From: Kudoa neothunni
Taxonomy: Eukaryota > Animalia > Cnidaria
Reading direction: 5' to 3'
Assembly: GCA_964304625.1 (NCBI GenBank)
Contig: OZ199839.1
Coordinates: 9,792,671-9,856,670, forward strand
Length of the DNA stretch: 64,000 nt
Shown here: one piece after another, positions 11,430 through 57,376 of the stretch
How positions within the stretch are numbered: the first letter of the stretch is position 1
Layout of the letters: each line of letters starts with the position of its first letter
Notes under the pieces: model-generated
The model's input: the letters and a program-made list of their open reading frames with translations, nothing else
The model's database searches: none
Told to the model about the DNA's origin: nothing
Position numbers and translations under genes: made by a program

Positions 11430-14386
11430 ATGGTCTCATTTAGCTTGCTTGTGGCATTATTTTGTAATAAATTAAAATTCTCGCTTCTTTTTAAACCATT
11501 TTAGGCATTAAGAAAGTTTTTGTGCTTGGAGCCACAGGTGCGGCTACCGAACCTGCCAAAGTTCTCACCTATCGCATAGCAGACAGTGACAAAGTACATC
11601 TGACTTTATCTGGAACAACATATGCCACATCGGGGAAAAAATGCCTTATAAGAAAGGAAAAGGAAAATGCAGTTGAATTTGGTGATATAAATACATGTAA
11701 TGATAATGATAATTCACATGGGACTGGGAAATGTCTTCGTGCTTGCTCTGGAGAAAACATTAAATTGGATTTTAATGTGTTATCACCCAAAACAAAATAT
11801 ATTTATGTATATTCTGGGGGTGAATATGCAGAAATACATAATAAGAATAATGGAGGAGATGTGTTTGGATTGTCCATTCGTAATTTTTATTAATTTGTTT
11901 TTAAAAATAATTAAATATAGCTCTCTTGGTGAATCCAATAGTCACAATTTCCACAGATGAGTCAACAAAATTGAAACTTGCAACCAAAACATGTCCTAAA
12001 GTCGCTTGTCCCATTTATTACAAAGGTGTCCAATACGCCGAAGGGTCAGTCGCAGATAACTGTATAACAGAAATTACAAATACGGTTGATTTTGATGTGC
12101 TGATACCACACTATGAAATGAAATGTATGAATTTACCAAGCTTCTTCTACAATATGCCAAATACATACATGAAAAAAAACATTGATATATATAAACCCCA
12201 ATATTACGTGACCTATAAAGAGGGGGACGACGCAACGACAAAATATCTCTTAAAGTTTACAAATGCTTTCCCATCAGAAATTTGTTTTTTTAATGTAAAA
12301 GATGCAACAACTACCACACAAGGGAGTACGAATACCTACGTATCATCATGTGGTGGTGGAGCCGGAAAAAACTGTTACGCTCCATGTAATAATGTGGAAT
12401 TGAAATTTTCTACTTCCAAACCAATATTAAAAATATTAATTAAAACTCGGCGCCATAAATTAGAAGTCGATGGAACCGACGTTGAAGGTTATGAAGAGAA
12501 CAAATTTGGTAATATTTCATTAAATTCAAGGTAATCGCCATTGAATTTTAGCTATTATTGAGCCAATAAATGCAAGCACCCTTTTAACAGCACATTCTGC
12601 TACAGGAATAACACTCAATCCGTCACCGTACAATCCCACACGAGACGATAGTGTGAAATTTACTACTTGTACTTTAAAACATTTTCCAGCCGATAAGCTG
12701 AGACCCAGCGATGGGACTGCTGCTCAGTGCGCAAACGTGCCATGTGGAACTGACTGTTCACAGAACTCTGTCCTTAGTCAGCTGGACGCAGGTAAAGCAT
12801 ATATAATTGAAATAGCTCCATCAACAACATTAAATACTCCCAACAACTTTAAAGAATATTTATTCTTTAGAACAGGTAATGTAACAAAGTGTATTACAAT
12901 TATGATTATTTAAATTTATTTTCAGCTAAAGCTAGCGCGTCAAATTACGTTACTACCATTCCCACAACGACCGACGTAACAGCTACATTAAAGGCAGTTG
13001 ACGGTGATGTGGAAAATAAACCGGCTGAACCAACATGTGAATATTACATCAGTAAAGCAGGTAAAAACATGTTTGTAGAAGCAGAATGTGGAGATAGTTA
13101 TCCATGCAGAGGATTTTGTAAGGACACCAAGAAATTGATAAATTTAAGGCTTAAAACAAATTATGATATCAAAGTTGTTTCAAATAAAGATTATGGAATA
13201 AAAATATTTGAAAACGTCTCAACAAGTAAAAATATGATATCGAAATCACATTTAATTTACGTTTAATAGCTTTTTCAACCCTCACTCTATCCCACAATTT
13301 TCTCGATAAAGGATTTCGAGTTGTTGGAAGATTAATAACTGCATATCCAGAAGCAATATGTCACTATAAACTTAAAGTTAAAAATGGAACTAGTTCAGAT
13401 GTAGTTTATTCCTGCCCAACAATTGCTCCTTCTCCTCCACAAGCCAACCCACCCAATACTAATGCTGTTCAATCTTCCACGAATCAAAATTTAGAACAAT
13501 CTAATTTGATCAGTCATATAAATTCTTCCAATAATAGAGTAGCAAGAGCGAGTGGCGCAGCTGTTATAACTCCAAATTCATCCGCCACCATTCCAACTAC
13601 GATTACTCCTACTGCGACTAATCAATCTAAGTTTCCACCATGCAATAAACCACCTCTATGCAACAACATAATAATCAGCGAGGGTTACGAGGCTGATAAA
13701 GAATACCAATTATTGGTTACAGCTGTGGACAGATCGGAAGAAATTACCATCAATATTCCCAAAAGTACAATATTTATTTACCAAATTATAAAAAGTTCTA
13801 ATATATCACTCACAAATAGATGCTCTCCCTGAGAATCCTGAGGAAGTAGATAAACAAATCACAGTGATTATCGAAAGAGCTGGCGATACTTTAAAAATCA
13901 CATCATTGCTTCCAAAACAAAAAAATGAAAATTCATTGTGTCGATGGATATTGAAAGATATGAACGATCCTTCTTTACCAATAGTGAAAAAATGTGACAC
14001 TGTTGGAAGTAGTAGGTGTGCACTTCCAACATGTAAATCATTCACAATTGAGGGCGTAAGCGATACCAGTGATTATCATTTAACGGTTATTCACTCCCAA
14101 GACCCTACAATAAAAGGCGTTGGAAGAATTAAACAAGGTAGTTAACAATAAATTATTATTATTTTAATGATCAATATAGGAGAAACTTCTAATCAATCAA
14201 AGTAAAATTGTAAAATGATAATATTAAATATGATTAATTTTTAGGGCGAGCACGTCAATGTATTTTTTAGTTATTTGAGTATATTTGAATGAGATACCAT
14301 TTAGGATAATTGGAATTATTGTTCCGATTGCTATCGTTGTAGTGGCGGCTGGATTGTACTTTGGTTACAAGAAGAACAAATCATAA
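11430..14386 (+). CDS. Array copy 2 (type A; first ATG mutated to ATT, starts at second ATG, MVSFSLLVALFC)
   Basis: Same splice sites and exon order as copy 1 (ORFs 11522, 11926, 12653, 12889, 13506, 13864). TM exon ends AAA TCA TAA at 14386. Confidence 0.86.
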
Positions 14387-15333
14387 GGATCGATCTAAAC
14401 ATCAGCTTATTAGTCATAATAAAACAATATTATTATTTTTAAAGTTTAAATTTTAACATTTTATATAGTTTTTTTATTTTTCAAATACTAAAGTGATATA
14501 AAGCCTATGGCATACTAATAATTTAGTCAAACTTATATTAGATTTATAGTTTTATTCAATCTTGTTCTACGTATTAATTCTTTTACTAAGTCTACTAAAT
14601 TAAAATAATATTTTTGTATGTTTAAAAATTTGCTCCAAATATGTTCAATGTAATAAGTTTTATTTTATTGAAAACTGAGGTTAGCTTATAGGTAGAAATC
14701 ATAATTTCCGACGTTTATTTTAGAAAAGTCGACGTTTAGATAAAAAAGGAATTTATTAGTGCAAATAATCAAAATTTTCCTAAAGAATAGATATATTTTA
14801 ATATTAACTATGTAATATAAAATAAAAATATTATATTGAAAACATTTTTCATCATTCACTTCTGAGATTGATGCATAAATTGGTTTAAAAAATTTTTATT
14901 TAGAAAAATTTGTTTCGATTACGATAATTAATGATGGTATGCACATCAAATCTTGATATTGTACCGACAAAATAATGTATTTTAATTTTTTGAGTATAAC
15001 TTATTTCTATCTATAATGTTACTTCTAGAGTAAAGTTACAATAATTCTTTTTACAATTTGTCTTTTTCATTCGTATCTAGAAAATTCGAGATATCATATG
15101 TATTCAATTCTTCAATATTATTATATCTATTTACATTCGATTTCTTCATAATTTTCTGGGAATTTTCAATTGTGAAACAACGGTATGTTTGATTTTTTAT
15201 TCTTCCCGATATTTCTAAACTTTAAAATCAACAAATTCTGACATCTTAATTAAAAAAAATCTTTTGGAACAAAAGAAAAATCAACTTCTCATCTTTAAAA
15301 CTACTTAATATGTTAGACTTGTGTATACTATAT

Positions 15334-18300
15334 CAGAGGTGGCCAAACTTGCCCAGAACGGGAGTCAATTATAAGGTTGCCTAAATTTTCATCAGCCACA
15401 AAGAATTAAAATCATTTATGTAACATTTCCTTATTCAACCCTTTCACGTTCTATTTTTTGGTTTTTCTAAAAAAATATATATTGATAATTGGATATTTTT
15501 TAGTAAAAATATATAATTTTAATTTGAAAAATAATTATATCATGAAGATTTTTTAAATTTTGTTCATGTGCATTTAATTACACATTGGGACTAAATGATA
15601 AATAAAAGTTGAAAATGAATAAAATGTTCAAAGTAACTATTCAAACATTAGATTTAATGAATAATTATTTTAAATTTCAAAATTCATGAAACGTTATTAA
15701 CAAATAACCCTAAAACAGCATGTCTCCCATGAACCATCTCCAAATTTTTTTCATTTTTCTTAGTAATAATATATAAATTTATTTATAATGTCAACATAAT
15801 GTAATTTTTTATTTATAAATTTATTTTTTAACGCGTATTGGTTCGGTGTATTTAATTTCACTAAGATTAGAAGAAAAAATGACATAATAATTTGCAAGAA
15901 AATAACACACAAAATAATAAACGTACGGATTAATTCAACTTAATTAATTTCATTTTTGATGAAATTCGTAGAAACAATTCCTTTCTATAACCCGAAAACA
16001 ATTCGTTTTGCATTTAATGCATTTGAATGACATAATTTTTTGGACAAACTTTGCATCTATTACGTGTGGGCGTGCCTTCGGGGGAAGGCCCAACATTGTC
16101 GAATCAGATATCATCAGAAAGAGAGGGAACCACAATTTTCTGACTTATTGAATTCTTCAATTCACTTTCTACTGATAATGATGATTTCCCTCGCTTTAAC
16201 TTTACGTTTGTTTCCTTTTAAGAAACGTTAAAGACTCGTATTCTGAATAGGTGAAATTCAGTTAACCAAATATTTCGCTCTCTTCTATTTCTCTTTTATA
16301 ATACCCAAGAGTCCACCAAAGCTGTATTTATTCCTCAATAAAATATCCTCAAGTTAACATTTTAAACCGTTGTTTGGTTGGTTTTCCATGCACATGTTGC
16401 TTTGAACAGCACCTACCTTTAAATGATATCATCTGTTCATCTACAGGTAACTTCCTTTCGGGTTGAATCTTTAACCAATTTGATCTTAAATAGTCAAAAA
16501 ATTGTCTTATTTTCAAAAACCTACAAAAAAAGGATTGGATTGTTGAGTGACTATTTCGTCATTGTATTTTAAAATGAAGAAATCAACTCAAATCTACGGC
16601 GTATGAACACGTTAGCAATTGGCTCAAACTTAAAACATCTTTGCCAATAACAACGATATCTAGGCATCCTTATTATACCCATTAAAATGATAACTCCAAT
16701 AAACTTTTCTATTTCATCACTATCAGTTTTGAAACATGAATTAGATCGGCTGAAATAAAGGTTTTTTTGTTCAACCATCGAATCTATGAAAGATTTATTC
16801 ATAAATTGGTTGAAGTAATCGATAGGAATAAAAAGTCCATTTATTTCTTCAAAATATCACTCTGAATTCTCATAATCAACATTATTATTTAATGTTAAAA
16901 TCTATATAATCCAATTATATTTGAAGTTCGAGTTGTATTTTTCTTCGTCGGTAACCTCATTATGGTTTTCTGAGTATTCATCGCATTTTTCAAAAATATC
17001 GATATTTTTATTTTCTAAACAGATCTCCGGTTCTAAAATATTAGGATCGGGCATATTGACTACTTTTTGTCCTATTTCTCCACTTTTTGCAGATAAATCC
17101 GAAATATTGTAATTCATTTCTTCATCACGTGTGTTCCACGGAATCCCAATGTGCATTTAAATGCACAAGCTCTAATACCCAAATAGCTATTTATTCTTAA
17201 AATCTTTTTATATATTTTATTATTTGTTATGAAAAATTCAAATTAATTTTTAAAGTTGACGTTGATAATGAACACTGATCAATTCTATGTGTGTAATCTT
17301 TCACGTTTGGAGCATGCTCTATATATAGATGAAAAACATAATATTTTCTTACATTTTCAAGGAAAATTATTCATACTTTTAAATAATGATGACAATTAAG
17401 TATTGATTGTGATACATCAAACATATTGAATGAAACAGTAGTTAAGTGTATTAAAAGATTGCGTTTTTCTTACGTGCATTCAAACGCACACTGGACGCGA
17501 AAGGGTTAAACTTACATTTTTGGAAAGTTTTGGGTAAATAATAAGATATATTTATGTAGAAATATAAATAAAGGTCTTTATTTCTTTCTTATTCAGTTAC
17601 TCGCTGGAAAACTTTCATATAATTTTTATAGGTATAATTTATGATGGTTTTTCCAAAAAGGTTTATTAGGTGTTAATAATCCAAGAAACTTTTTATCCAT
17701 GAAAAATATCGCAAAAAAAATTAAATTAATTACGTGCGAATTAAATAATAACACAAGAATTTAATGCATTCGAACAAATTATTTTTAGAAATTGTTTCTA
17801 ATATTACAAGTTTTTTATGTTCCAATATTATCGGTGTGCTGGCGGTAATCTGCTTCGTAAGCTGTTAGTGCTGGATAAATTAGTTCCTGCAGGTGTTTGT
17901 TTGGGAGGGAGGGAACCGCGATGCTTCGATTTTGCAAACTTCATCATTGAAAAAATGCAGACAACACTAAGTTTTTCCAATGAAAACAAAAAGTGTTTGA
18001 GGCAAATTTATTTTTATTTTTAATATTTATTTTCTGTAACATATTTCCAAAGATCGTTGGATGAGTTGGAATCATGAATCATCCTTAAAACTTTAATACG
18101 TGTTTTATTCTTTCGATATCTATCATTTTTGTAATGGATAAACCCTAGTTCTAATTGCATTTCCTAATGTAACTAGTAATAATTCTAGTTTTTATTGAAT
18201 ATTAAAACTGTTTGGTAGACTATAACTATGTTTTCTAATCAAAAATATTATCTAGTTCACGATTTAAGAGTTTATTTCTTCACTAGATTACATAGTTTGA

Positions 18301-18399
18301 ACTTTGCACTTTCCTGAATTAACGCACGGGTTGAATAAAAAAAAATTTTTTCAAGTGTTTCACCATAACGTTTAAAAAGCCACAGTTTGGCCACCCCTG
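15334..18399. mobile_element. Non-autonomous hAT (Charlie/Buster-like) element carrying a nested piggyBac
   Basis: TIRs CAGAGGTGGCCAAACT / AGTTTGGCCACCCCTG and a perfect 8-bp TSD TACTATAT (15326-15333, 18400-18407). Confidence 0.9.
15439..17505 (-). mobile_element. Internally deleted piggyBac (PGBD3-like remnants)
   Basis: TCAA|CCCTTTCACGT ... ACGCGAAAGGG|TTAA ends. Minus-strand EIEKFIGVIILMGIIRMPRYRCYW, VDEQMISFKGR and C-terminal CIKC..CFYEFH. Repeated TGTGCATTTAA.T.CACA palindromes. Confidence 0.85.
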
Positions 18400-21331
18400 T
18401 ACTATATCCTAAATTTATCTAATTATTCAATATGTTTGGATAAACCTATTGAAGAATTGACCACTATTTTGGCGGATAATTTGTAGACGAAAGCAAATTT
18501 TTTGGATAAATAAATTATTCATTCATCAATTATTACAATAATCGAATAAAACGGCAAATTTAATACTGATTCATGATGATTTTCCAAATAATTTTCCATA
18601 ATAACCTTGGAATACTGTTGGCAACATAACGTGCAGTTGTACAAATTATATCACCTAATATCCAGGACTTAGCATTTCTTTTTCTTATCATATACTATTT
18701 TTGAGTTCTATTTCATATTTTATACCATTTTTAGGAATGAGATAAAAAAATCCTTGACGGATCAATTTTTTAATAAAACAGCAGAAAGTTTTATACAGAA
18801 CCGTTATTGTACAAAATTTCGCATCCACTACCTTTTGTTTTGCATAATGGGTTAAATGCGTAAAGCATGTTATAGTTGTAATATTCTTATGAATCTTGTT
18901 TATTATTTTTTAATATTTTCTTTATGCAACGCGGAGTTCGGAACGATGGAAACAAAATTTTGCCACATAACCCACTTTTTTAAATACTTCTGAAATGACG
19001 TTGGCCATTATGACAGAATTGCGTTCATTCAAAATTCATATTATAACATTAAAACATTTATTTCATTAGTGTTCAGATTGTAAAAACAAATCAATATGCA
19101 TATTATTGGTCTGTTTTAAGTTAAAGCTATCATCTAATATAAGGGAAAATGTATATTTGCCATAATTTGATTTTAAAACTTCAAAATTATTATCATAAAA
19201 AGATGGTAAATATTAGGACAACTAATTGTGTCATTTAGCGATAACCTGCCTGAATATTAATACTTAATTATAACATCACGAAAAGTGTTTCTGTCGTCAG
19301 ATGTCAATAGGAAAGACCATCAAAAGCAACAATAGACAATAAGACCATTTTATGATCATTATCCCGTTTATTTCTAAAAAATATTTGAAACGGGAGAGAA
19401 ATTTTCAAACGAGGCATTAAGAACAGATATTTTTCGAACAAACGTGTTTCATAACTCTCTTCTTTAAAATGGGAAGCATAAGTTTGCTGAACCTGAAAAC
19501 CAATGTGCCATTTACATTTTCTATATCAGTTCATTCAAGTAGAAAATTTTTGATTTTTCTCCCTCTTCTGCCTATAATGAAGAAATTTAATAGAAAATGA
19601 GAGTTTAAAAAGGAAATAAAATTCTAGGAATAGAAAACTAACGTTTACCGATTATAATCGATAATTACGGTTTCTGAACATAACATTTTCTAATTCCTTG
19701 TTTTTCACCGCCGCAGGGATTTTTTTAATTTATTATTTTTCTTAATAAATACATGTAATACCTAATATTCCTAGTATCAAAATTTATACTAATTTCTAAA
19801 AATAATATATAATTTAATTTCTGTCATTACTTTATAATTTTAAAAATAATTTATAGATTATTTTCTAAACTTTTTTTTATAAATAAATTAATTGTTAAAT
19901 ATGAATTGATTCTATAAAAAGTTTTCACACAATAAAATTTGTATAAATTCGATGGATTTAATATATTAGACGTTTTTGACTAATGTGTCGTCCGAAGAAA
20001 CAAAGATTATTCAACCAAAGTATGGCCGTTACTTATAAAGATTAAAAATATTAATTTTCTCTATTAGTAAAGAAACGACAAAATATAAAATTTTACTTTG
20101 AGAATTTTGATTAAAAAATTAACTTAGATACTGATTTTCTAGCAATGAGATATTGCGAAAGATAATAAGGTTTTTTTTAATTGTCATAAAATATCGGAAA
20201 AGTCTAAGTTCATATTTAGGAATTAATATTTTTAAATTTATCTCCAGAAATTATATTAAAAACCTCTTATTTCGATTTATTATTCAAGTTATTAATTTTA
20301 TTGAGAAGTATATTTTCATCAGATACAAATTCTTATCGGAGACTTCTCAAACTTCACTGATTAGCTCAAATATTTTTCTTTAATTTATAGTTTTGCATAA
20401 TAAAATGAGCATATTTAATTTAATGAGTAATCTTTTACATATTGAAATTGAATATATAATTTTCTACATTTAATTATTAACAAAATCAACGTTTAACTTT
20501 AAATGTAATCGGTACTTAAGACTATTAAAATCTACATCATTATAATGGTTATAAAAAGGTAAAATGAGTATATATTGATGTTAGTCACTCCGAATGATTT
20601 ACAATATTGGTAGATAAAATATAACAAATAACTTTGGTGGGCATTTTTATTAATGTGAGTCTTCCGAAAGCCGAATTGATAAATTTACAATCAAAATTTC
20701 AAAAAATGGCCAATGTTTCAGAGAGATGATTCGATGAAAATAAAATTTTATGAAGACAGAATTATCCAAGTAGCAAGAGTTCTTACTGACACATTAATAT
20801 ATTTTTTACTGTCAATACAACTCATTCCATACGAAATTTGAAAATTAGTTTCAATTGATTAACTACATTTTTTCCAACATATTTTCTAGAGAATAATCAA
20901 ACGTAAATTAATTTAAAGCCAGCTGCTACACCAAATATTGCGTTGATCTTGTTGATAGAAAATCCAAAGTTTTCTTAGACAAATTACTCTTAATAGTTGT
21001 TTTTTCATTATAACGACGGAGAGCCATTAGTTCAACTTTTTATTCTAATCAGCCCTTTTTTAACTGTTTCAGCCAGATATTGCATACACTATCCCAAAGA
21101 AAGCCAAATGATAATTATTCCATATCTTTATTTAACATTAAGTTTTCGTAAAGGATTACATAAAATACATGCTGAGGTAGTCTTGTAAAGATTGTAAAAT
21201 TCTAATAACTTTAAATAACTTAAATAATCCGATTAGTCATAATTTTTAGATAGTATTATCTCTTTCATGAATAGTTATTGTTTATTGATACTATAAAATA
21301 AATAATCTGTTATATATTCTATCTAATATAA

Positions 21332-31400: not shown

Positions 31401-31446
31401 TGGTACTATAAAATAAATAATCTGTTATATATTCTATTTAATATAA

Positions 31447-39594: not shown

Positions 39595-39631
39595 AGTTGA
39601 CTTTGGTTAAAACTATTATACCAACAATTAA

Positions 39632-39780
39632 CCCTTACAGGACGGTGTTCGGAAAATGTACGTATGTTCTGGTGTGGGGTCCGCGCGGACCCCAGCGGTT
39701 ATTTCATTATGTAAGCGCAATTTTTATAATAACTACCATTTTATGTGATTAATATATTGTAAAGATACGGAAACAATTAT
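39632..39780. mobile_element. piggyBac-type terminal fragment
   Basis: TTAA|CCCTTACAGG starts exactly where homology to the copy-1 flank (TTAA at 6041) ends. Perfect palindrome GGGGTCCGCGCGGACCCC at 39676-39693. Confidence 0.6.
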
Positions 39781-39782
39781 TA

Positions 39783-41791: not shown

Positions 41792-41809
41792 TATTTGGTT
41801 AAAATTGTC

Positions 41810-44720: not shown

Positions 44721-45651
44721 GTTCTTAGTAATAAAACGAGCATATAATTTTATACGTAATTTTTTACGTATTGAAATTGAATGTATAATTTTCTAGATTT
44801 AATTAATAACAAAATCAACATTTATTTTTTAATGTAATTGTTACTTAAGACTATTAAAATCTACAGCATTATAATGACAATCAAAACGTAAAATCTATAA
44901 TTTATGATGTTAGTCATTCCGAATAATTTACAATATCGACAGATAAAATATAACGAATAATTTTAGTAGGCATTTTTATTAATGTGAGTCTTCCGAAAGC
45001 CGAATTGATAAATTTACAATCAAAATTTCAAAAAATGACCAATGTTTCAGAGAGATGATTCGATGAAAATAAAATTTAATGGGAGACAGAATTATCCAAG
45101 TAGCAAGAGTTCTTACTGACACATTAATATATTTTTTACTGTCAATATAACTCATTCCATACGAAATTTGAAAATTAGTTTCAATTGATTAACTATATTT
45201 TTTCCAACATATTTTCTAGAGAATAATAAAAAATGAATTAATTTTAACCCAGCTGCTACACTACATACTGCGTTGATCTTGTTGATACAAAATCCAAAGT
45301 TTTCTTAGAAAAATTACTCTTAATAGTTGTTTTTTCATTATAACGACGAAGAGCCATTTGTCCAACTTTTTATTCTAATCAGCTCCTTTTTATCCGTTTC
45401 AGCCAGATATTGCATACACCATTCAAAATGAAGCCAAATGATAATTATTCCATATCTTTATTTAACATTAATTTTTCGTAAAGGATTACATAAAATACAT
45501 GCTGAGGTAGTCTTGTAAAGATTGTAAAATTCTAATAACTTAAATAACCCGAATAATCACAATTTTTAGATAGTATTAACTCTTTCATGAATAGTTATTG
45601 TTTATTGATACCATAAAATATATAATCTATTATATAGTCTATTTTATATAA

Positions 45652-48620
45652 ATGAAGACAAACATGGTCTCATTTAGCTTGCTTGTGGCATTATTTTGTA
45701 ATAAATTAAAATTCTCGCTTCTTTTTAAACCATTGTAGGCATTAAGAAAGTTTTTGTGCTTGAAGCCACAGGTGCGGCTACCGAACCTGCCAAAGTTCTC
45801 ACCTATCGCATAGCAGACGGTGACAATGTACATCTGACTTTATCTGGAACAACATATGCCACATCGGGGAAAAAATGCCTTATAAGAAAGGAAAAGGAAG
45901 GTACAGTTGAATTTGACCAGATCAATACATGTCCTAGCAGTGATAGTGCACATGGAGGTGGAAAATGTCTTCGGCTTTGTTCTGGAGATGATATCAAACT
46001 GGGATTTAATACTTTTTCACCTAGAACAAGATATGTATATATATATTCTGGGAATGATTATGAGGCCATGAAAGATAAAGATAATGGAGGAGATGTGTTT
46101 GGATTGTCTATTCGTATATTGCATTAAATGTTTTCGAAATATAATTTGAATATAGCACTCTTGGTTAATCCAATAGTCACAATTTCTACAGACACTTCAG
46201 GAAAATTGAACCTTCTAACAAAAACATGCCCAAAAGTTGCTTGTCCCATTTATTACAAGGGTGTTAAATACGCCGAAGGGCTGATCGCAGCTGACTGTGT
46301 AACTGCAATTACAAATACAGTTGATTTTGATGTATTAATTCCTCACTATGAGATGAAATGTTCAAATTATCCAAGCTTTTTCTACCATATGCCAAATACA
46401 TACATGAGAAAAAACATTGCTACATATAAACCACAGTACTATGTTACATATAAGGAAAATGATAATGACAAGTTAAAATATCTTCTTAAGTTTACAAATG
46501 CTTTCCCATCAGAAATTTGTTTTTTTAATGTAAAAGATGCAGCGACTAACGCACCGACAAACACGAATAAATATGAATCATCGTGTGGCGGTGAGGCTGG
46601 AAAAAAATGTTATGCACCCTGCAATAATGTTGAATTGGCAGTTACTGCAACCAAACAGATCGTGAAAATATTAATTAAAACTAGGCACCATCAATTAGAA
46701 GTAGATGGAGCCTACGTTGATGGTTATGAAGAGAAAAAATTTGGTAATATTTCTTTAAATTTTAACTAGTTATCATTAGTATTAGCTATTGTTGAGGCCG
46801 CAAAAGCAAACGCTCTTTTAACGGCACATTCTGCTACTGGAGTTACAATTAATAGATCCCTTTATAGTCCGGATGGAAATAACGGCGTAAAATTTACGGA
46901 TTGCGTTTTAAAATACTTTCCGGCTGATGTACCAAGATCCTCCACAGGAACACCAATAAATTGCCCAGATGCTACCTGTGGAAACGAATGCACAGTCAGT
47001 CCCACTATTGGTGCTTTGGCCGCAGGAAAAGCATACATATTTGAAATAGCTCCTAGTACCGCTTTAAATAATTATGAGAATTTTAAAGAATATTTGTTTT
47101 TCAGAACTAGTAATTTAGTAAAGTTTACAATCATTATTTAAATTTATTTTCAGCTAAAGTTAGCGCGTCAAATTACGTTACTACCATTCCCACAACGACC
47201 GACGTAACAGCTACATTAAAGGCAGTTGACGGTGATGTGGAAAATAAACCGGCTGAACCAACATGTGAATATTACATCAGTAAAGCAGGTAAAAACATGT
47301 TTGTAGAAGCAGAATGTGGAGATAGTTATCCATGCAGAGGATTTTGTAAGGACACCAAGAAATTGATAAATTTAAGGCTTAAAACAAATTATGATATCAA
47401 AGTTGTTTCAAATAAAGATTATGGAATAAAAATATTTGAAAACGTCTCAACAAGTAAAAATATGATATCGAAATCACATTTAATTTACGGTTGATAGTTT
47501 TTTCAACCCTCACTCTATCCCACAATTTCCTCGATAAAGGATTTCGAGTTGTTGGAAGATTAATAACTGCATATCCAGAAGCAATATGTCACTATAAACT
47601 TAAAGTTAAAAATGGAACCAGTTCAGATGTAGTTCATTCCTGCCCAACAGTTGTCCTTTCTCCTCCACCGGCCAACCCACCCAATACTAATGCTGTTCAA
47701 TCTTCCACGAATCAAAATTTAGAACAATCTAATTTGATCAGTCATATAAATTCTTACAATAATAGAGTTGCAAGGGCAAGTGGTGTAGCTGATTTAACTC
47801 CAAGTTCATCTACGAACACTCCAACTACGATTACTCCTACTGCGACTAATCAGTCTAAGTTCCCACCGTGCAATAAACCACCTCTATGCAGCAGCATAAT
47901 AATCAGCGAGGGTTACGAGGCTGATAAAGAATACCAATTATTGGTTACAGCTGTAGACAGATCGGAAGAAATTACCATCAATATTCCCAAAAGTACGATA
48001 TTTATTTATCAAACTATATAAAGTTCTAATATATCACACACAAATAGATGCTCTCCCTGAGAATCCTGAGGAAGTAGATAAACAAATCACAGTGATTATC
48101 GAAAGAGTTGGCGATACTTTAAAAATCACATCATTGCTTCCAAAAGAAAAGAATGAAAATTCATTGTGTCGATGGATATTGAAAGATATGAACGATCCTT
48201 CTTTACCAATAGTGAAAAAATGTGACACAGTCGGTACTAATAGGTGTAAACTTCCAACATGTAAATCATTCACAATTGATGGTGTAAGCGATACCAGTGA
48301 TTATCATTTAACGGTTATTCACTCCCAAGACCCTACAATAAAAGGCGTTGGGAGAATTAAACAAGGTAGTTAACAATAAATTATTATTATTTTAATGATC
48401 AATATAGGAGAAACTTCTAATCAATCAAAGTAAAATTGTAAAATGATAATATTAAATTTGATTTAATTTTTAGGGCGAGCACGTCAATGTATTTTTTAAT
48501 TATTTGAGTATATTTTAATGAGATACCATACATTTTAGGATAATTGGAATTATTGTTCCGATTGTTATCGTTGTAGTAGCAGTCGGATTGTACTTTGGTT
48601 ACAAGAAGAATAAATCTTAG
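45652..48620 (+). CDS. Array copy 6 (type A)
   Basis: ATG at 45652; ORFs 45756, 46128, 47237, 47491, 48092; conserved splice sites; TM exon stop at 48620. Confidence 0.88.
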
Positions 48621-51600
48621 GAATCGATCTAAACACCAGCTTATTAGTCTTAATAAAACAATATTATTATTTCTTAAAGATTTTGAATTTTAGTATTCAA
48701 TATAATTCAATGTTTTTTTAATAATAAAATGATGTAAAGTCTATGGCATATTATAATTTAATCAACCTCAGAATCATCCCAGATATATAGTTTTATTCAA
48801 TATTTGCCGTCATACTAATTTCTTAATTAAACCCAATAAGTAAAAATAAATATTTTTTAAAATTTTAAAAATTCCCATCAAATACATTAAATCAAAAATT
48901 TTTGTCCTGTTTACAAAATTTTGACAAATAAATTTGAGACCGTAATTTTCGACGTTTATTTTCGAAAAATTCGGCGCTTAAATAAAAAGGTGTGCAATCG
49001 TGCAAAACTCAAAATGTTCCTAGAGAATATATATATATTTATTTAAATATTAATTATTTAGTTTTAAATTAAAATATAATATTGAAAATATTTTTCATTA
49101 TTCACTTGTGAGATTGGTCCTATCAATTGTGATAAATGATAATTGTATACACATCAAATTTTGGTATATTTCTGAAAAAATAGAATATTTTAATTTGGTT
49201 GATTAATAACTTAATTCTATCTATAATATCACTCTCAGGAGAAGAAAATGAAATAGCTTACGTTATAATTTTTCATTTATATTCGTATCAAGAAAATTTG
49301 AATTATCATTTGGATCCACGTCTATTATTTTCACATCTCTTTACATCAACATTCACTTTAACATTGTTTTTTGTATGAAAATTCTCTAGAAATTATGTAT
49401 GATTTATGCTTGTTTCCGATAATTTTAAAATTAAAATATCAATAAATCTTTGTATCAATTAAATTTTTTTTATTTTAATACAAAATATTAAGTGCTTAAA
49501 TTATTGAATATTTAATAGCTACCTCAAATATTTGTAACGTCTCATTTCTTGATTTAAAAAAGTGTAACTGCTGATTTATAAAAAACGTCATTTAATGAAA
49601 ACTAACATAATAGAATTGGAATGTAAGAAATTTATCAAAAGTTGATTTAATTTTATCTAAACTCCGTAAATTTAAATAATTTTAATTAGGCATGAATCCA
49701 ATGCAAACAGGTCATTATTACCCCTAAATTTTTTGGATAATAATCTTTTTGAATAAAAAGTTATGAATAAATTACAATAAAATCATGATAATTCTTTCAT
49801 TAATCGTAGTATCACTGATATTAAGTGTGAGTAAAAAATTTAGTTATATCTTGGCTAAGATAAAAAAATAGAGAATCTAAGTAAAGATACCTAATATTAA
49901 TTTAGTAAAATTAGTCATATCCATATAATTATAAATGTCTTCAATAAATTAGATTTTTATTCATGAAAAGAACGTTATTTTTATCTTGAATAGTTATTGT
50001 TTATTCATCGCATAAAAATATAATCAGATTTATTCATTATTTCATAACAATGAGAGCAATATTGGCTTTGTTAGTATTGTTTATAACTTTGTTTAGTATT
50101 TTTCTACTTTTAAAACCCTTATTATATTTCAGTTAGATAGGGTTAAGTATTCTGTTAGTGCAGCTGAAGTTACGACTACCGAACCTGCAAAAATTCTTAA
50201 TTACAACATAGTAGCTAGCAATAAAGTGCGTCTGACTTTATCTGGAACAATTTATGCTGAATCAGATAAAAAATGCCTAATAAGAAAAGAAAAGGAAGGT
50301 ACAGTTGAATTTGACCAGATCAATACATGTGATGGAAGTGATAGTGATCATGGAACTGGGAAATGTCTTCGTGCTTGTTCTGGAAATATCGAATTGGCAT
50401 TTAATATCTTATCACCCAGAACAAAATATGTCTATGTGTTTTCGGATAATGATGCTGCCACAATGAAAGAGAAAAATAATGGCGGAGATGTGTTTGGGTT
50501 GTCTACACGTATTTTACGTAGAATTTATATATTAAATTAATTGCGTTTAGCGTTGTTGGTGAATCCAACAGTCACAATATCCTTACACGATTCAATTAAA
50601 TTGAAACTTGCAATTAAAACAAGTCCAAAGGTGAATTGTCCTATTTATTACAAGGGTGTCCAATATGCAGTCGGTACCACTAGTGGTACTTGTGAAACTG
50701 ATATTAATAATACGGTTGATTTTGACGTGTTAATACCTTATTATGAAATGAAATGTGTAAGTTATCCAAGCTTCTTCTACCATATGCCAAATACATACAT
50801 GAAAAAAAACATTGATATATATAAACCACAATACTATGTGACCTATAAAGAGGGTGATGACGCAAAGACAAAATATCTCCTAAAATTTACAAATTCATTT
50901 CCATCAGAGATTTGTCTTTTTAATGTGAAAGATGCAGCGACTAGCGCAGGCACGAATAAATATGAATCATCGTGTGGCGGTGAGGTCGGAAAAAAATGTT
51001 ATGCACCATGTGATAATGTTGAATTGGCGCTTGCTACATCCAAGCCGATCGTGAAAATATTAATTCAAACTAGATACCATAAATTTGGAGTGGATGAGAC
51101 TAGCGATGATGGTTATGAAGAGAACAAATTTGGTAAGGTTTCAGTCAATTTTAACTAGTTATCATTAGTATTAGCTATTGTTGAGGCTGAAAAAGAAAAC
51201 ACTCTTTTAACAGCACATTCTTCTACTGGAGTTACAATTAATAGATCCCTGTATAATCCAGGGAATAATAATGTTAAATTCACGAATTGTGCTTTAAAAT
51301 ACTTTCCAGCTGATGTACCAAGATCCTCCGCGGGAACATCAATCAATTGCTCAGATGTTGCATGTGGAAGCGAATGCACAGCCAGTGCCACTATTGGTGC
51401 TTCCATTGCAGGAAAAGCACATATAATTGAAATAACTTCTACTACCCCTATAACTAATTATCCTGAATTTAAAGAATATTTGTTTTTCAGAACAAGTAAT
51501 CAGACTGATATTTCATAGTATATAATTATTTTAGCCCCAAAACAAGGTTCAGATTTCGTTACTACCACTCCCACAACAACCGACGTAACAGCTACATTAA

Positions 51601-54600
51601 AGGCAGTTGACGGTAATGTGGGTACAGCATCCACCGAGCCTACATGTGCATATTACTTGAGTGAACAAGGAAAAGGAACATTTGTGGAAGCAGAATGTGA
51701 AGATAGTAAACCATGCAGAGGATTTTGTAGGGACATCAAGAAATTGATAAATCTAAATCCCAAAACAAATTATGATATTAAGGTCGTTTCAAATAAAGAG
51801 TATGGAATAAAAATATTTGAAAATGTCTCAACGAGTAAAAATATGACATTGCCATTTCATTTAATTTACGGTTGATAGTTTTTTCAACCCTCACTCTATC
51901 CCACAATTTCCTCGATAAAGGATTTCGAGTTGTTGGAAGATTAATAACTGCATATCCAGAAGCAATATGTCACTATAAACTTAAAGTTAAAAATGGAACC
52001 AGTTCAGATGTAGTTCATTCCTGCCCAACAATTGCCCCTTCTCCTCCACAAGCCAACCCACCCAATACTAATGCTGTTCAATCTTCCACGAATCAAAATT
52101 TAGAACAATCTAATTTGATCAGTCATATAAATTCTTACAATAATAGAGTAGCAAGAGCGAGTGGCGTAGCTGTTATAACTCCAAATTCATCCGCCACCAT
52201 TCCAACTACGATTACTCCTACTGCGACTAATCAATCTAAGTTTCCACCATGCAATAAACCACCTCTATGCAACAACATAATAATCAGCGAGGGTTACGAG
52301 GCTGATAAAGAATACCAATTATTGGTTACAGCTGTGGACAGATCGGAAGAAATTACCATCAATATTCCCAAAAGTACAATATTTATTTACCAAATTATAA
52401 AAAGTTCTAATATATCACTCACAAATAGATGCTCTCCCTGAGAATCCTGAGGAAGTAGATAAACAAATCACAGTGATTATCGAAAGAGCTGGCGATACTT
52501 TAAAAATCACATCATTGCTTCCAAAACAAAAAAATGAAAATTCATTGTGTCGATGGATATTGAAAGATATGAACGATCCTTCTTTACCAATAGTGAAAAA
52601 ATGTGACACAGTCGGTACTAATAGGTGTAAACTTCCAACATGTAAATCATTCACAATTGATGGTGTAAGCGATACCAGTGATTATCATTTAACGGTTATT
52701 CACTCCCAAGACCCTACAATAAAAGGCGTTGGGAGAATTAAACAAGGTAGTTAACAATAAATTATTATTATTTTAATGATCAATATAGGAGAAACTTCTA
52801 ATCAATCAAAGTAAAATTGTAAAATGATAATATTAAATTTGATTTAATTTTTAGGGCGAGCACGTCAATGTATTTTTTAATTATTTGAGTATATTTTAAT
52901 GAGATACCATACATTTTAGGATAATTGGAATTATTGTTCCGATTGTTATCGTTGTAGTAGCAGTCGGATTGTACTTTGGTTACAAGAAGAATAAATCTTA
53001 GGAATCGATCTAAACACCAGCTTATTAGTCTTAATAAAACAATATTATTATTTCTTAAAGATTTTGAATTTTAGTATTCAATATAATTCAATGTTTTTTT
53101 AATAATAAAATGATGTAAAGTCTATGGCATATTATAATTTAATCAACCTCAGAATCATCCCAGATATATAGTTTTATTCAATATTTGCCGTCATACTAAT
53201 TTCTTAATTAAACCCAATAAGTAAAAATAAATATTTTTTAAAATTTTAAAAATTCCCATCAAATACATTAAATCAAAAATTTTTGTCCTGTTTACAAAAT
53301 TTTGACAAATAAATTTGAGACCGTAATTTTCGACGTTTATTTTCGAAAAATTCGGCGCTTAAATAAAAAGGTGTGCAATCGTGCAAAACTCAAAATGTTC
53401 CTAGAGAATATATATATATTTATTTAAATATTAATTATTTAGTTTTAAATTAAAATATAATATTGAAAATATTTTTCATTATTCACTTGTGAGATTGGTC
53501 CTATCAATTGTGATAAATGATAATTGTATACACATCAAATTTTGGTATATTTCTGAAAAAATAGAATATTTTAATTTGGTTGATTAATAACTTAATTCTA
53601 TCTATAATATCACTCTCAGGAGAAGAAAATGAAATAGCTTACGTTATAATTTTTCATTTATATTCGTATCAAGAAAATTTGAATTATCATTTGGATCCAC
53701 GTCTATTATTTTCACATCTCTTTACATCAACATTCACTTTAACATTGTTTTTTGTATGAAAATTCTCTAGAAATTATGTATGATTTATGCTTGTTTCCGA
53801 TAATTTTAAAATTAAAATATCAATAAATCTTTGTATCAATTAAATTTTTTTTATTTTAATACAAAATATTAAGTGCTTAAATTATTGAATATTTAATAGC
53901 TACCTCAAATATTTGTAACGTCTCATTTCTTGATTTAAAAAAGTGTAACTGCTGATTTATAAAAAACGTCATTTAATGAAAACTAACATAATAGAATTGG
54001 AATGTAAGAAATTTATCAAAAGTTGATTTAATTTTATCTAAACTCCGTAAATTTAAATAATTTTAATTAGGCATGAATCCAATGCAAACAGGTCATTATT
54101 ACCCCTAAATTTTTTGGATAATAATCTTTTTGAATAAAAAGTTATGAATAAATTACAATAAAATCATGATAATTCTTTCATTAATCGTAGTATCACTGAT
54201 ATTAAGTGTGAGTAAAAAATTTAGTTATATCTTGGCTAAGATAAAAAAATAGAGAATCTAAGTAAAGATACCTAATATTAATTTAGTAAAATTAGTCATA
54301 TCCATATAATTATAAATGTCTTCAATAAATTAGATTTTTATTCATGAAAAGAACGTTATTTTTATCTTGAATAGTTATTGTTTATTCATCGCATAAAAAT
54401 ATAATCAGATTTATTCATTATTTCATAACAATGAGAGCAATATTGGCTTTGTTAGTATTGTTTATAACTTTGTTTAGTATTTTTCTACTTTTAAAACCCT
54501 TATTATATTTCAGTTAGATAGGGTTAAGTATTCTGTTAGTGCAGCTGAAGTTACGACTACCGAACCTGCAAAAATTCTTAATTACAACATAGTAGCTAGC

Positions 54601-56990
54601 AATAAAGTGCGTCTGACTTTATCTGGAACAATTTATGCTGAATCAGATAAAAAATGCCTAATAAGAAAAGAAAAGGAAGGTACAGTTGAATTTGACCAGA
54701 TCAATACATGTGATGGAAGTGATAGTGATCATGGAACTGGGAAATGTCTTCGTGCTTGTTCTGGAAATATCGAATTGGCATTTAATATCTTATCACCCAG
54801 AACAAAATATGTCTATGTGTTTTCGGATAATGATGCTGCCACAATGAAAGAGAAAAATAATGGCGGAGATGTGTTTGGGTTGTCTACACGTATTTTACGT
54901 AGAATTTATATATTAAATTAATTGCGTTTAGCGTTGTTGGTGAATCCAACAGTCACAATATCCTTACACGATTCAATTAAATTGAAACTTGCAATTAAAA
55001 CAAGTCCAAAGGTGAATTGTCCTATTTATTACAAGGGTGTCCAATATGCAGTCGGTACCACTAGTGGTACTTGTGAAACTGATATTAATAATACGGTTGA
55101 TTTTGACGTGTTAATACCTTATTATGAAATGAAATGTGTAAGTTATCCAAGCTTCTTCTACCATATGCCAAATACATACATGAAAAAAAACATTGATATA
55201 TATAAACCACAATACTATGTGACCTATAAAGAGGGTGATGACGCAAAGACAAAATATCTCCTAAAATTTACAAATTCATTTCCATCAGAGATTTGTCTTT
55301 TTAATGTGAAAGATGCAGCGACTAGCGCAGGCACGAATAAATATGAATCATCGTGTGGCGGTGAGGTCGGAAAAAAATGTTATGCACCATGTGATAATGT
55401 TGAATTGGCGCTTGCTACATCCAAGCCGATCGTGAAAATATTAATTCAAACTAGATACCATAAATTTGGAGTGGATGAGACTAGCGATGATGGTTATGAA
55501 GAGAACAAATTTGGTAAGGTTTCAGTCAATTTTAACTAGTTATCATTAGTATTAGCTATTGTTGAGGCTGAAAAAGAAAACACTCTTTTAACAGCACATT
55601 CTTCTACTGGAGTTACAATTAATAGATCCCTGTATAATCCAGGGAATAATAATGTTAAATTCACGAATTGTGCTTTAAAATACTTTCCAGCTGATGTACC
55701 AAGATCCTCCGCGGGAACATCAATCAATTGCTCAGATGTTGCATGTGGAAGCGAATGCACAGCCAGTGCCACTATTGGTGCTTCCATTGCAGGAAAAGCA
55801 CATATAATTGAAATAACTTCTACTACCCCTATAACTAATTATCCTGAATTTAAAGAATATTTGTTTTTCAGAACAAGTAATCAGACTGATATTTCATAGT
55901 ATATAATTATTTTAGCCCCAAAACAAGGTTCAGATTTCGTTACTACCACTCCCACAACAACCGACGTAACAGCTACATTAAAGGCAGTTGACGGTAATGT
56001 GGGTACAGCATCCACCGAGCCTACATGTGCATATTACTTGAGTGAACAAGGAAAAGGAACATTTGTGGAAGCAGAATGTGAAGATAGTAAACCATGCAGA
56101 GGATTTTGTAGGGACATCAAGAAATTGATAAATCTAAATCCCAAAACAAATTATGATATTAAGGTCGTTTCAAATAAAGAGTATGGAATAAAAATATTTG
56201 AAAATGTCTCAACGAGTAAAAATATGACATTGCCATTTCATTTAATTTACGGTTGATAGTTTTTTCAACCCTCACTCTATCCCACAATTTCCTCGATAAA
56301 GGATTTCGAGTTGTTGGAAGATTAATAACTGCATATCCAGAAGCAATATGTCACTATAAACTTAAAGTTAAAAATGGAACCAGTTCAGATGTAGTTCATT
56401 CCTGCCCAACAATTGCCCCTTCTCCTCCACAAGCCAACCCACCCAATACTAATGCTGTTCAATCTTCCACGAATCAAAATTTAGAACAATCTAATTTGAT
56501 CAGTCATATAAATTCTTACAATAATAGAGTAGCAAGAGCGAGTGGCGTAGCTGTTATAACTCCAAATTCATCCGCCACCATTCCAACTACGATTACTCCT
56601 ACTGCGACTAATCAATCTAAGTTTCCACCATGCAATAAACCACCTCTATGCAACAACATAATAATCAGCGAGGGTTACGAGGCTGATAAAGAATACCAAT
56701 TATTGGTTACAGCTGTGGACAGATCGGAAGAAATTACCATCAATATTCCCAAAAGTACAATATTTATTTACCAAATTATAAAAAGTTCTAATATATCACT
56801 CACAAATAGATGCTCTCCCTGAGAATCCTGAGGAAGTAGATAAACAAATCACAGTGATTATCGAAAGAGCTGGCGATACTTTAAAAATCACATCATTGCT
56901 TCCAAAACAAAAAAATGAAAATTCATTGTGTCGATGGATATTGAAAGATATGAACGATCCTTCTTTACCAATAGTGAAAAAATGTGACAC
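48153..56990 (+). repeat. Near-perfect tandem duplication, period 4381 bp
   Basis: ORF pairs 50226/54607, 50541/54922, 51618/55999 and 51872/56253 have identical translations at a constant offset of 4381. The spacers look identical. Confidence 0.92.
50050..53001 (+). CDS. Array copy 7 (type B; hybrid with a copy-8-like 5' part and copy-6-like 3' end)
   Basis: ATGAGAGCAATA at 50050. ORFs match copy 8 up to exon 7, then GTNRCKL...DGV as in copy 6. Stop at 53001. Confidence 0.86.
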
Positions 56991-57376
56991 TGTTGGAAGT
57001 AGTAGGTGTGCACTTCCAACATGTAAATCATTCACAATTGAGGGCGTAAGCGATACCAGTGATTATCATTTAACGGTTATTCACTCCCAAGACCCTACAA
57101 TAAAAGGCGTTGGAAGAATTAAACAAGGTAGTTAACAATAAATTATTATTATTTTAATGATCAATATAGGAGAAACTTCTAATCAATCAAAGTAAAATTG
57201 TAAAATGATAATATTAAATATGATTAATTTTTAGGGCGAGCACGTCAATGTATTTTTTAGTTATTTGAGTATATTTGAATGAGATACCATTTAGGATAAT
57301 TGGAATTATTGTTCCGATTGCTATCGTTGTAGTGGCGGCTGGATTGTACTTTGGTTACAAGAAGAACAAATCATAA
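54431..57376 (+). CDS. Array copy 8 (type-B 5' end; 3' end and downstream flank match copy 2)
   Basis: ATG at 54431. Exon 7 GSSRCAL...EGV and the TM variant PIAIVVVAAG with TAA stop are as in copy 2. Confidence 0.86.

What the first reader, a model, noticed from the sequence alone, without database searches (positions are those of the whole stretch)
11740..57376. Paralogues are patchwork mosaics: segmental gene conversion shuffles variant blocks
The nearest relative changes along the gene. NDNSHGTGK joins copies 1+2. The 3' half of exon 2 plus intron 2 joins 2+3. KENDNDKLKY and TATKQIV join 3+6. LEV.NNQYDG joins 1+4. HKFGVD.TSDDG joins 5+7/8. DIPRTTVR joins 1+3. Exon 5 VENKPAEPTCEYYISKAG joins 2+6. 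The 3' flanks group as 1+5, 2+8 and 4+6+7. Shared tracts include introns and silent sites, which argues against convergence. Inference: combinatorial diversity generated by conversion or unequal exchange.
Basis: seen in the sequence. Interest (0 to 1): 0.85.

Follow-up and report, generated by a model that had tools for sequence, protein, structure and literature searches.

The report
Mosaic surface-protein gene array, Kudoa
Eight tandem copies of a fish parasite's membrane-protein gene are patchworks of one another, made by repeated copying of short stretches between copies (gene conversion) plus at least one unequal crossover; the mechanism is well known, but the gene family is large and undescribed and sits in a parasitic cnidarian.

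Summary
Confirmed. The array continues outside the window.

every peptide and flank grouping was found where stated.
- **Mosaic signal:** the nearest relative changes along the gene far more than chance allows. PHI gives z = -36, and still -16.8 on silent and intron sites only.
- **Identical tracts:** 64 are significant, 27-948 bp long. 54 are bounded on both sides and 27 include intron sequence.
- **Tree conflict:** segment trees disagree at 95-100% bootstrap, and every segment rejects every other segment's tree (AU p <= 2.4e-4).
- **Control:** 100 single-tree simulations never approach the observed values.
- **Breakpoints:** they are not concentrated in introns.
- **Gradient:** silent divergence falls from 0.4-0.7 in exons 2-4 to 0.05 in exon 7.

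Best reading is interlocus gene conversion plus unequal crossover. F-G-H is a textbook crossover product.

The genome matches the published Kudoa neothunni assembly, a myxozoan in yellowfin tuna. The protein is a type I membrane protein of tandem Ig/FN3-like four-cysteine modules. The family has at least 150 members, no Pfam match and almost no public relatives.

First-stage notes flag similar patchwork in other arrays of this genome; these are unchecked. Somatic antigenic variation is untested.

The parts
2351..5328 (+).
   Evidence: exons open, GT/AG at all introns, signal-like exon 1.
11430..14386 (+). Copy B (2), the reference gene model. Exons: 11430-11463, 11505-11879, 11921-12508, 12552-12875, 12926-13225, 13270-13764, 13820-14137, 14180-14201, 14305-14386. 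Introns 1-7 are phase 1.
21332..24289 (+). Copy C (3), intact
31447..34412 (+). Copy D (4), intact
35888..38845 (+). Copy E (5), intact, type-B 5' end with a different promoter region and signal exon
45652..48620 (+). Copy F (6), intact
50050..53001 (+). Copy G (7), a hybrid. It is identical to H for 2463 bp (50173-52601), then identical to F (52601-53104) and to F's flank.
54431..57376 (+). Copy H (8). Its 5' part equals G. Its 3' part (56554-57476) is identical to B, and so is about 2.5 kb of the downstream spacer.
12933..13248 (+). 316-bp tract in B with 0 differences from F 47161-47476 (exon 5 plus part of intron 5). The left flank is 78% identical.
46379..46861 (+). 485-bp tract in F with 0 differences from copy J outside the window. 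It spans exon 3, intron 3 and exon 4, covers 203 polymorphic sites, and has flanks 68-69% identical.
3927..4377 (+). 451-bp tract in A with 0 differences from C 22894-23344 (exon 5, intron 5, exon 6). The left flank is 64% identical.
11796..11931 (+). Two tracts in B (11796-11869 and 11873-11931) identical to C 21710-21845. They cover the 3' half of exon 2, intron 2 and the start of exon 3. The whole stretch is identical to J.
33012..33117 (+). 106-bp tract in D identical to E 37449-37554 (exon 5). The left flank is 68% identical.
14387..21331 (+). 3' flank of B plus a 5.9-kb spacer and the upstream region of C. Near-identical copies follow H (57478-63408) and partial copy I, and each copy is itself a mosaic.
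63409..64000 (+). Upstream region of a further copy (I), cut by the window end and then by 401 N

Best explanation
The window is part of a tandem array on chromosome 2 of a genome that matches Kudoa neothunni, a myxozoan cnidarian that parasitises tuna muscle. The array has at least 11 full copies.

Each gene has nine exons. It encodes a signal peptide, about seven 100-residue four-cysteine beta-sandwich modules of Ig/FN3 type, a transmembrane helix and a five-residue tail. Misaligned homologous recombination between copies has repeatedly overwritten short stretches of one copy with the sequence of another. This is interlocus gene conversion, with tracts of tens to hundreds of bases whose breakpoints fall anywhere in exons or introns. 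Occasionally recombination resolved as an unequal crossover, which made hybrid genes and duplicated whole units (F-G-H, and the blocks after B, H and I).

Exchange is frequent enough in the membrane-proximal 3' half to keep the copies 95-100% alike, silent sites and introns included. In the distal exons 2-4 old divergent variants survive and are reassorted in small patches, so each gene is a different combination of a limited set of blocks.

Shown: the recombination, the tract structure, the divergence gradient and the intactness of the copies. Inferred: surface location, that events are germline or evolutionary rather than somatic, and any role in evading fish immunity.
For: **Recombination tests**
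- PHI z = -36, with 0 of 2000 permutations reaching the observed value.
- The signal holds for third positions plus introns (z = -16.8), introns and UTR alone (-9.7), exons 2-4 alone (-15.7), and window copies only (-34.8).
- In a GENECONV-type run test, 40 pairs reach global p < 0.01.
- There are 64 significant tracts; 54 are internal and 27 include intron sequence.
- Tracts with 0 mismatches sit next to flanks of 64-78% identity.
- Segment trees conflict at UFboot 95-100.
- All 56 cross-tests are rejected by AU at p <= 2.4e-4, with delta lnL 48-460.
- 100 AliSim replicates on one tree give a best tract score of 8-17 against 86 observed, 0-5 tracts over threshold against 72, and an incompatibility ratio of 0.97-1.05 against 0.78.

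**Pattern along the gene**
- dS is 0.40-0.69 in exons 2-4, 0.26 in exon 5, 0.10 in exon 6 and 0.05 in exon 7. Introns follow the same gradient, and dN/dS is 0.28-0.45 throughout.
- Breakpoints in introns are 28 of 241, against an intron share of length of 13%.
- A-H, J and K are all open with conserved splice sites.
- The 5' and 3' flank classes are discordant.
- The spacers are themselves mosaic.

**Identity of genome and protein**
- The genome is 40.26 Mb in contigs of 17.15, 12.04 and 11.05 Mb plus one of 18.2 kb. (TAAACC)n occurs at one chromosome end only. This matches PMC12239612.
- The AlphaFold model has pLDDT 82 and shows two beta-sandwich domains.
Against:
- The assembly comes from about 7x HiFi of a diploid parasite. 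The authors purged haplotypic duplication, and a 401-N run cuts the array just past the window. Copy number and order around H-I-J, and the very recent 100% blocks (G/H, B/H/I), are therefore less secure than the older patches.
- Non-reciprocity, which formally defines conversion, cannot be seen in one genome.
- There is no expression or localisation evidence.
- No window reaches dN/dS > 1, so an adaptive role for the diversity is not demonstrated.
Confidence: 0.85

Rival explanations
1. A programmed or somatic antigenic-variation system. New mosaics would be made by segmental gene conversion during an infection, with one or a few family members expressed at a time, as in Babesia ves, trypanosome VSG or Borrelia vlsE. 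This extends the best explanation rather than excluding it.
For: The archive is very large, with at least 150 full-length exon-3 homologues on all three chromosomes. The protein is predicted to be a type I membrane protein. Variability is concentrated in the distal modules. Many tracts have zero differences, so they are recent. The parasite lives in a vertebrate that has adaptive immunity.
Against: Ten of 11 copies here are intact, and each has its own promoter region and signal exon. There is no expression-site and silent-cassette layout. dN/dS is below 1 everywhere at 30-codon resolution. No read or RNA data could be examined.
Confidence: 0.15
2. An assembly artefact. The mosaics would be chimeric joins between paralogues, haplotype switches, or cross-correction of reads in a low-coverage metagenomic assembly.
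For: Coverage was about 7x, the assembler was hifiasm-meta, haplotypic duplication was purged, and the scaffold was curated. The array is broken by an N run. The near-identical long blocks G/H, B/H/I and the spacers are the kind of sequence that can be mis-threaded.
Against: - A false join needs a long identical overlap and does not switch back. Yet 54 of 64 tracts are internal patches of 27-485 bp inside sequence 64-90% identical on both sides.
- Copies about 85% alike are not overlapped or cross-corrected by a HiFi assembler (general knowledge).
- Z and A-H lie on one gap-free stretch.
- Haplotype switching swaps alleles of one locus. It cannot create similarity to a different locus.
Confidence: 0.04
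3. No recombination. The shared blocks would reflect convergent selection on protein motifs, or uneven rates along the gene on a single duplication tree.
For: The 3' half is much more conserved than the 5' half.
Against: The signal is equally strong at silent and intron sites. Simulations on one tree that mimic the site rates never reproduce it. AU tests reject a common tree. The 3' conservation includes silent sites and introns.
Confidence: 0.01
4. Exon shuffling. Whole module-encoding exons, all flanked by phase-1 introns, would be swapped by recombination inside introns.
For: Introns 1-7 are phase 1 and most exons encode one module. This layout would allow in-frame exon exchange.
Against: Breakpoints are not enriched in introns: 11.6% of switches against 12.8% of length. 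Most tracts begin and end inside exons, and 27 run through introns.
Confidence: 0.03

Closest known systems
Segmental gene conversion in parasite variant-antigen families (Babesia bovis ves, Trypanosoma brucei mosaic VSG, Anaplasma msp2, Borrelia vlsE)
   Same: A large family of surface-protein genes. Short tracts are copied between members, giving combinatorial mosaics. Variable regions sit on a conserved framework.
   Different: Those systems convert an expressed copy from silent or partial donors and switch during infection. Here all copies examined but one are complete genes with their own promoter region and signal exon, the array is 2.2 Mb from the only assembled telomere, and neither somatic switching nor exclusive expression has been tested. 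The protein fold and the lineage (a metazoan, Cnidaria: Myxozoa) also differ.
Concerted and birth-and-death evolution of tandem multigene families with interlocus gene conversion and unequal crossover (MHC, KIR, globin clusters, Giardia VSP arrays, Schistosoma SmPoMuc)
   Same: Tandem paralogues, conflicting local trees, hybrid genes from unequal crossover, silent sites and introns homogenised in one part, and old variants retained in another.
   Different: This is a new family in a new lineage. The 5'-to-3' gradient of homogenisation within a 3-kb gene is very steep, with dS falling from 0.7 to 0.05.
Metazoan cell-surface proteins built of tandem FN3/Ig modules encoded by phase 1-1 exons (cytokine receptors, NCAM/L1, Dscam)
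   Same: A predicted tandem beta-sandwich ectodomain, a single transmembrane helix, and roughly one module per symmetric phase-1 exon.
   Different: No Pfam fn3 or Ig match. Each module has a four-cysteine pattern. The cytoplasmic tail is five residues, so no signalling domain is present. There are hundreds of lineage-specific copies.

Membership tests
Interlocus (ectopic) gene conversion among paralogues | Phylogeny changes significantly along the alignment | tested here: met
   clades conflict at 95-100% support, and AU rejects all cross-segment trees (p <= 2.4e-4).
Interlocus (ectopic) gene conversion among paralogues | Identical tracts between otherwise divergent copies that are unexpectedly long and bounded on both sides | tested here: met
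   64 significant tracts, 54 of them internal. Simulations on one tree give 0-5.
Interlocus (ectopic) gene conversion among paralogues | Silent sites and introns take part, so it is not convergence | tested here: met
   (z = -16.8 silent plus intron, -9.7 introns only). (27 tracts include intron sequence).
Interlocus (ectopic) gene conversion among paralogues | Non-reciprocal transfer, with the donor unchanged | not testable with these tools
   Needs parent and offspring, or several haplotypes. Only one assembly is available.
Interlocus (ectopic) gene conversion among paralogues | Mosaics present on single DNA molecules | not tested
Unequal crossover in a tandem array | A hybrid gene with the 5' part of one neighbour and the 3' part plus flank of the other, and equal unit spacing | tested here: met
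   G equals H over 2463 bp, then equals F over the last ~500 bp of the aligned span (0 mismatches), and its next 100 bp of 3' flank is 100% identical to F. Spacings are 4381 and 4381.
Programmed antigenic variation system (VSG, ves, vlsE type) | A large archive of variant genes | tested here: met
   all 150 scored candidates match the full exon 3 at E <= 2e-55, out of 470 first-look candidates.
Programmed antigenic variation system (VSG, ves, vlsE type) | Silent or partial donor cassettes feeding an expression site | tested here: not met
   10 of 11 array copies are complete, with their own start, signal exon and splice sites. Only Z has a frameshift.
Programmed antigenic variation system (VSG, ves, vlsE type) | Switching within an infection and mutually exclusive expression | not tested
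   No reads or RNA could be laid. The source paper reports very few parasite RNA reads.
FN3 / Ig-like domain superfamily | Sequence match to the Pfam fn3 or Ig models | tested here: not met
   no Pfam family above threshold for any exon.
FN3 / Ig-like domain superfamily | Beta-sandwich fold superposable on solved FN3 or Ig domains | tested here: inconclusive
   The model has pLDDT 82. Residues 1-78 give Z 7-8 at rmsd 2-3 A to Ig-like domains. Residues 84-195 give Z 6.0-6.3 to FN3 modules. Foldseek E is 3e-4 to tandem FN3 receptors. The tool notes that Z under 8 may reflect only a common arrangement.

The most novel reading that the evidence does not exclude
This family is the variant surface coat of a myxozoan. 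It would be a repertoire of hundreds of genes whose distal modules are continually reshuffled by segmental gene conversion, possibly also mitotically within the fish, letting Kudoa persist in muscle despite adaptive immunity. That would be the first antigenic-variation-type system described in Cnidaria, and one of very few in any animal parasite.
Probability: 0.15. Interest if true: 0.85.

Novelty: new member of a known kind. Interest (0 to 1): 0.6.

Why it matters
Myxozoans cause major losses in fisheries and aquaculture, and how they persist in immunocompetent fish is poorly understood. I found no paper describing a variant surface-protein family or gene conversion in this group. The genome paper does not mention the family at all.

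A lineage-specific family of at least 150 membrane-protein genes could be a few percent of a roughly 5,300-gene genome. Its clear recombination-driven mosaicism makes it an obvious candidate for the host-parasite interface. It gives concrete targets for expression, localisation and serology work.

The array is also a clean natural example of a steep conversion gradient inside a single gene.

Tried and rejected
- **The look-up of encoding contigs** for an F exon-3 ORF spanning a junction found nothing on record.
- **Pfam** on six exon translations gave nothing above threshold.
- **Word-indexed protein search** gave one hit at 49% identity.
- **Protein Atlas by features** gave no usable hit. **Atlas by fold** gave only generic Ig/FN3 rows with TM <= 0.51.
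- **First AlphaFold run** with paralogues only gave pLDDT 56 and was discarded. Adding metagenomic relatives raised it to 82.
- **Nematode origin** was considered because of chromosome sizes like Strongyloides. I dropped it: there was no SL1 hit, though the control was silent too, the 18-kb GC-rich mitochondrial contig did not fit, and the genome matched the Kudoa paper.
- **A donor outside the array** for the very divergent exon 4 of B and E was sought. None is closer than 72%.
- **Exon shuffling at introns** is not supported.
- **Spliced model:** All searches used single exons by reference.
Full report
**What is there**

A self-comparison of the window finds eight full copies of a roughly 3-kb unit on the + strand, plus the upstream part of a ninth at 63409-64000. 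Fetching 20 kb on each side shows three more copies and one partial copy:
- Z lies before the window.
- J and K lie after the window.
- Partial copy I is cut by 401 N that start at the first base after the window.

I built a gene model on copy B by reading the splice sites. It has nine exons from 11430 to 14386. Introns are 40-55 nt, except intron 8 at 103 nt, and introns 1-7 are phase 1. Projected through the alignment, A-H, J and K are all open with GT/AG at every intron. Only Z has a frameshift, in exon 3.

The product is about 845 residues:
- a hydrophobic N-terminal exon
- about seven modules of roughly 100 residues, each with four conserved cysteines
- a Ser/Thr/Pro/Asn-rich insert in the sixth module
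- a transmembrane stretch and a five-residue tail

Every search used single exons by reference.

**Whose genome**

The assembly has 40,260,978 bases in four contigs of 17.15, 12.04 and 11.05 Mb plus 18,219 bp. The small contig is GC-rich and encodes mitochondrial-type membrane proteins.

Weber, Paulini and Blaxter (G3 2025, PMC12239612) describe a Kudoa neothunni assembly that fits on every point:
- 40.2 Mb with scaffold N50 of 12.0 Mb
- three chromosome-scale scaffolds plus a circular mitochondrial genome
- 30.4% GC and median intron length of 49 bp
- a (TAAACC)n telomere at one chromosome end only

I found that repeat only at the right end of C2. The sequencing runs that hold the window also fit a parasite hidden in host data of about 0.8 Gb. 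I therefore take the organism to be K. neothunni, a myxozoan from yellowfin tuna muscle.

The paper also states facts that bear on reliability. Coverage was about 7x HiFi, the assembler was hifiasm-meta, scaffolding used YaHS, haplotypic duplication was purged, and the fish stage is diploid.

**Checking the observation**

The 3' flank groups hold with one nuance. B=H is 100% and D~F=G is 98-100%. A and E are identical for about 100 bp past the stop but 83% over 200 bp.

Overall pairwise identity is flat at 84-89%, except G/H at 98.6%. In 150-bp windows, however, the nearest relative of each copy changes repeatedly, and is often 100% identical.

**Is it more than chance?**

*Compatibility (PHI).* Among 490 biallelic informative sites, neighbouring sites are far more compatible than distant ones. 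PHI gives z = -36, and none of 2000 permutations reaches the observed value. The signal persists in every subset tested:

| Sites used | z |
|---|---|
| Third positions plus non-coding sites | -16.8 |
| Introns and UTR alone | -9.7 |
| Exons 2-4 alone | -15.7 |
| Window copies only, G dropped | -34.8 |

*Identical tracts.* A GENECONV-type test on runs of identical polymorphic sites gives 40 pairs with global p < 0.01. After collapsing G with H there are 64 significant tracts of 27-948 bp, median 87 bp. 54 are bounded on both sides and 27 contain intron sequence. Examples, all with zero differences:

| Pair | Coordinates | Length | Adjoining 100 bp |
|---|---|---|---|
| F vs J | F 46379-46861 | 485 bp, 203 polymorphic sites | 68-69% identical on both sides |
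| B vs F | B 12933-13248, F 47161-47476 | 316 bp | left flank 78% |
| A vs C | A 3927-4377, C 22894-23344 | 451 bp | left flank 64% |

*Trees.* Maximum-likelihood trees of eight segments show conflicting clades at 89-100% ultrafast bootstrap:
- (B,(C,J)) in exon 2
- (C,(F,J)) in exon 3b
- (B,E) in exon 4
- (B,F) in exon 5
- (B,(G,H)) and (A,F) in exon 6
- (C,F,G) in exon 7
- (B,H), (C,J) and (D,F,G) at the 3' end

In AU tests every segment rejects every other segment's tree, with p <= 2.4e-4 and delta lnL of 48-460.

*Simulation.* I ran 100 AliSim replicates on the single best tree with site rates mimicked from the data:

| Measure | Simulated | Observed |
|---|---|---|
| Best tract score | 8-17 | 86 |
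| Tracts over threshold | 0-5 | 72 |
| Local / global incompatibility ratio | 0.97-1.05 | 0.78 |

**What kind of exchange**

Most tracts are short internal patches with sharp edges, which is what gene conversion produces. Painting each copy as a mosaic of the others places 28 of 241 switches in introns. Introns make up 13% of the length, so this is not exon shuffling at introns. Exchange partners are up to about 55 kb apart in the array.

There is also at least one unequal crossover:
- G is identical to H for 2463 bp.
- G is then identical to F to the end of the aligned span (about 500 bp), and for the next 100 bp of 3' flank.
- The F-to-G and G-to-H spacings are both 4381 bp.

This is the expected duplication product of a crossover between misaligned neighbours F and H.

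Larger blocks, each made of a gene 3' end, a 5.9-kb spacer and the next upstream region, follow B, H and I. They are themselves mosaics:
- B and H differ at 3 sites in 3.5 kb, then by 2-7% over 2.5 kb, then are nearly identical again.
- H and I differ at 5 sites in 5 kb, then by 2-7%.

The 5' ends fall into two unalignable classes (Z, A, B, C, D, F, J against E, G, H, K). These classes do not follow the 3' flank classes.

**A gradient along the gene**

Mean synonymous divergence falls along the gene, and introns show the same fall:

| Region | Divergence |
|---|---|
| Exons 2, 3, 4 (dS) | 0.40, 0.48, 0.69 |
| Exon 5 (dS) | 0.26 |
| Exon 6 (dS) | 0.10 |
| Exon 7 (dS) | 0.05 |
| Introns 2 and 4 (pairwise difference) | about 0.30 |
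| Intron 7 (pairwise difference) | 0.0 |

The conservation of the membrane-proximal half is therefore homogenisation, not protein constraint. dN/dS is 0.28-0.45 in every exon and never exceeds 1 in 30-codon windows. I see no coarse evidence of positive selection.

Exon 4 of B and E is as far from the other array members (65-72%) as from members of other arrays (about 69%). No closer donor exists anywhere in the genome. These look like old variants that have escaped homogenisation.

A table of groups at 97% identity or more per segment shows partners being reassorted. J, for example, pairs with C, then F, then C again.

**The protein and the family**

Pfam finds nothing. A profile of exon 3 searched against 1.84 billion representative proteins finds only 16 hits. 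All are short, unnamed open reading frames from ENA metagenome or Logan assemblies. Two lie on eukaryote-like contigs of one run, next to SNF5 and ribosomal protein S14 exons.

Within the genome, all 150 scored candidates match exon 3 end to end at E <= 2e-55, out of 470 first-look candidates, and they lie on all three chromosomes.

An AlphaFold model of exon 3 built with those relatives reaches pLDDT 82 and shows two beta-sandwich domains:
- Residues 1-78 superpose on Ig-like domains at Z 7-8.
- Residues 84-195 superpose on fibronectin type III modules at Z 6.0-6.3.
- Foldseek ranks tandem FN3 cytokine-receptor ectodomains first, at E about 3e-4.

At these scores I call the fold Ig/FN3-like. 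I do not claim family membership.

**Limits**

Three points argue against an assembly artefact:
- A false join needs a long identical overlap and does not switch back, whereas 54 of 64 tracts are short internal patches in divergent surroundings.
- Z and A-H lie on one gap-free stretch.
- Haplotype switching cannot create similarity to a different locus.

The most recent, fully identical long blocks (G/H, B/H/I) and the copy order across the N run are less certain, given the low coverage and the diploid source.

**Relation to earlier notes**

First-stage notes on this genome flag the same kinds of feature nearby and elsewhere. I tested the first four of these on this array, and they hold:
- the hybrid copy 7
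- the two 5' cassettes
- the FN3-like four-cysteine modules
- polarised homogenisation

The notes also report patchwork identity in other arrays, which I did not check.

**Verdict**

The mechanism is a known one, interlocus gene conversion plus unequal crossover in a tandem family. It acts here on a large, undescribed, lineage-restricted membrane-protein family of a myxozoan parasite. Whether the family serves antigenic variation remains open.

Noticed in passing
just past the window end (window-equivalent 64001-64401; G000:C2:9856671-9857071): A run of 401 N begins at the first base after the window, inside copy I. It is probably a scaffold gap. The sequence after it is 100% identical to B 14161-15500 and almost identical to the block after H, so it could be the other haplotype of that block or a real extra unit.
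   Followed up: partly
window 7818-8210 (+), 16572-16802 (-), 26361-27715 (-), 40014-41604 (-): The 5-6 kb spacers between some units hold transposon remnants. These are piggyBac-like DDE_Tnp_1_7 fragments, a pogo-like DDE_1 with a CENP-B_N domain, and a Spin-doc type zinc finger. Units without such insertions are spaced 4.4 kb apart.
   Followed up: partly
L001 (copy Z, window-equivalent -7043 to -6455): Exon 3 of copy Z is 589 nt instead of 588 and reads through 11 stops. It is the only broken copy in the array, or else a consensus error in a low-coverage assembly.
   Followed up: no
whole genome: The family has at least 150, and perhaps about 470, exon-3 homologues in many arrays on all three chromosomes. 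This is large for a genome with about 5,300 predicted genes, and the genome paper does not mention it.
   Followed up: partly
G000:C4 (18,219 bp; L007 + L010): The mitochondrial contig has 44% GC against about 30% in the nuclear genome. Its proteins are very divergent, and aragorn finds only doubtful tRNAs.
   Followed up: no
L041, L042 (run SRR31175926): A different sequencing run holds contigs with family members about 30-40% identical, next to SNF5 and RPS14 exons. This is probably another myxozoan hidden in host or environmental data.
   Followed up: no
window exon 6 of each copy, e.g. B 13430-13650: A Ser/Thr/Pro/Asn-rich insert of about 75 residues sits between the second and third cysteines of the sixth module. 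It contains the motif RVAR, which other first-stage notes flagged. It lies in the homogenised part of the gene.
   Followed up: no
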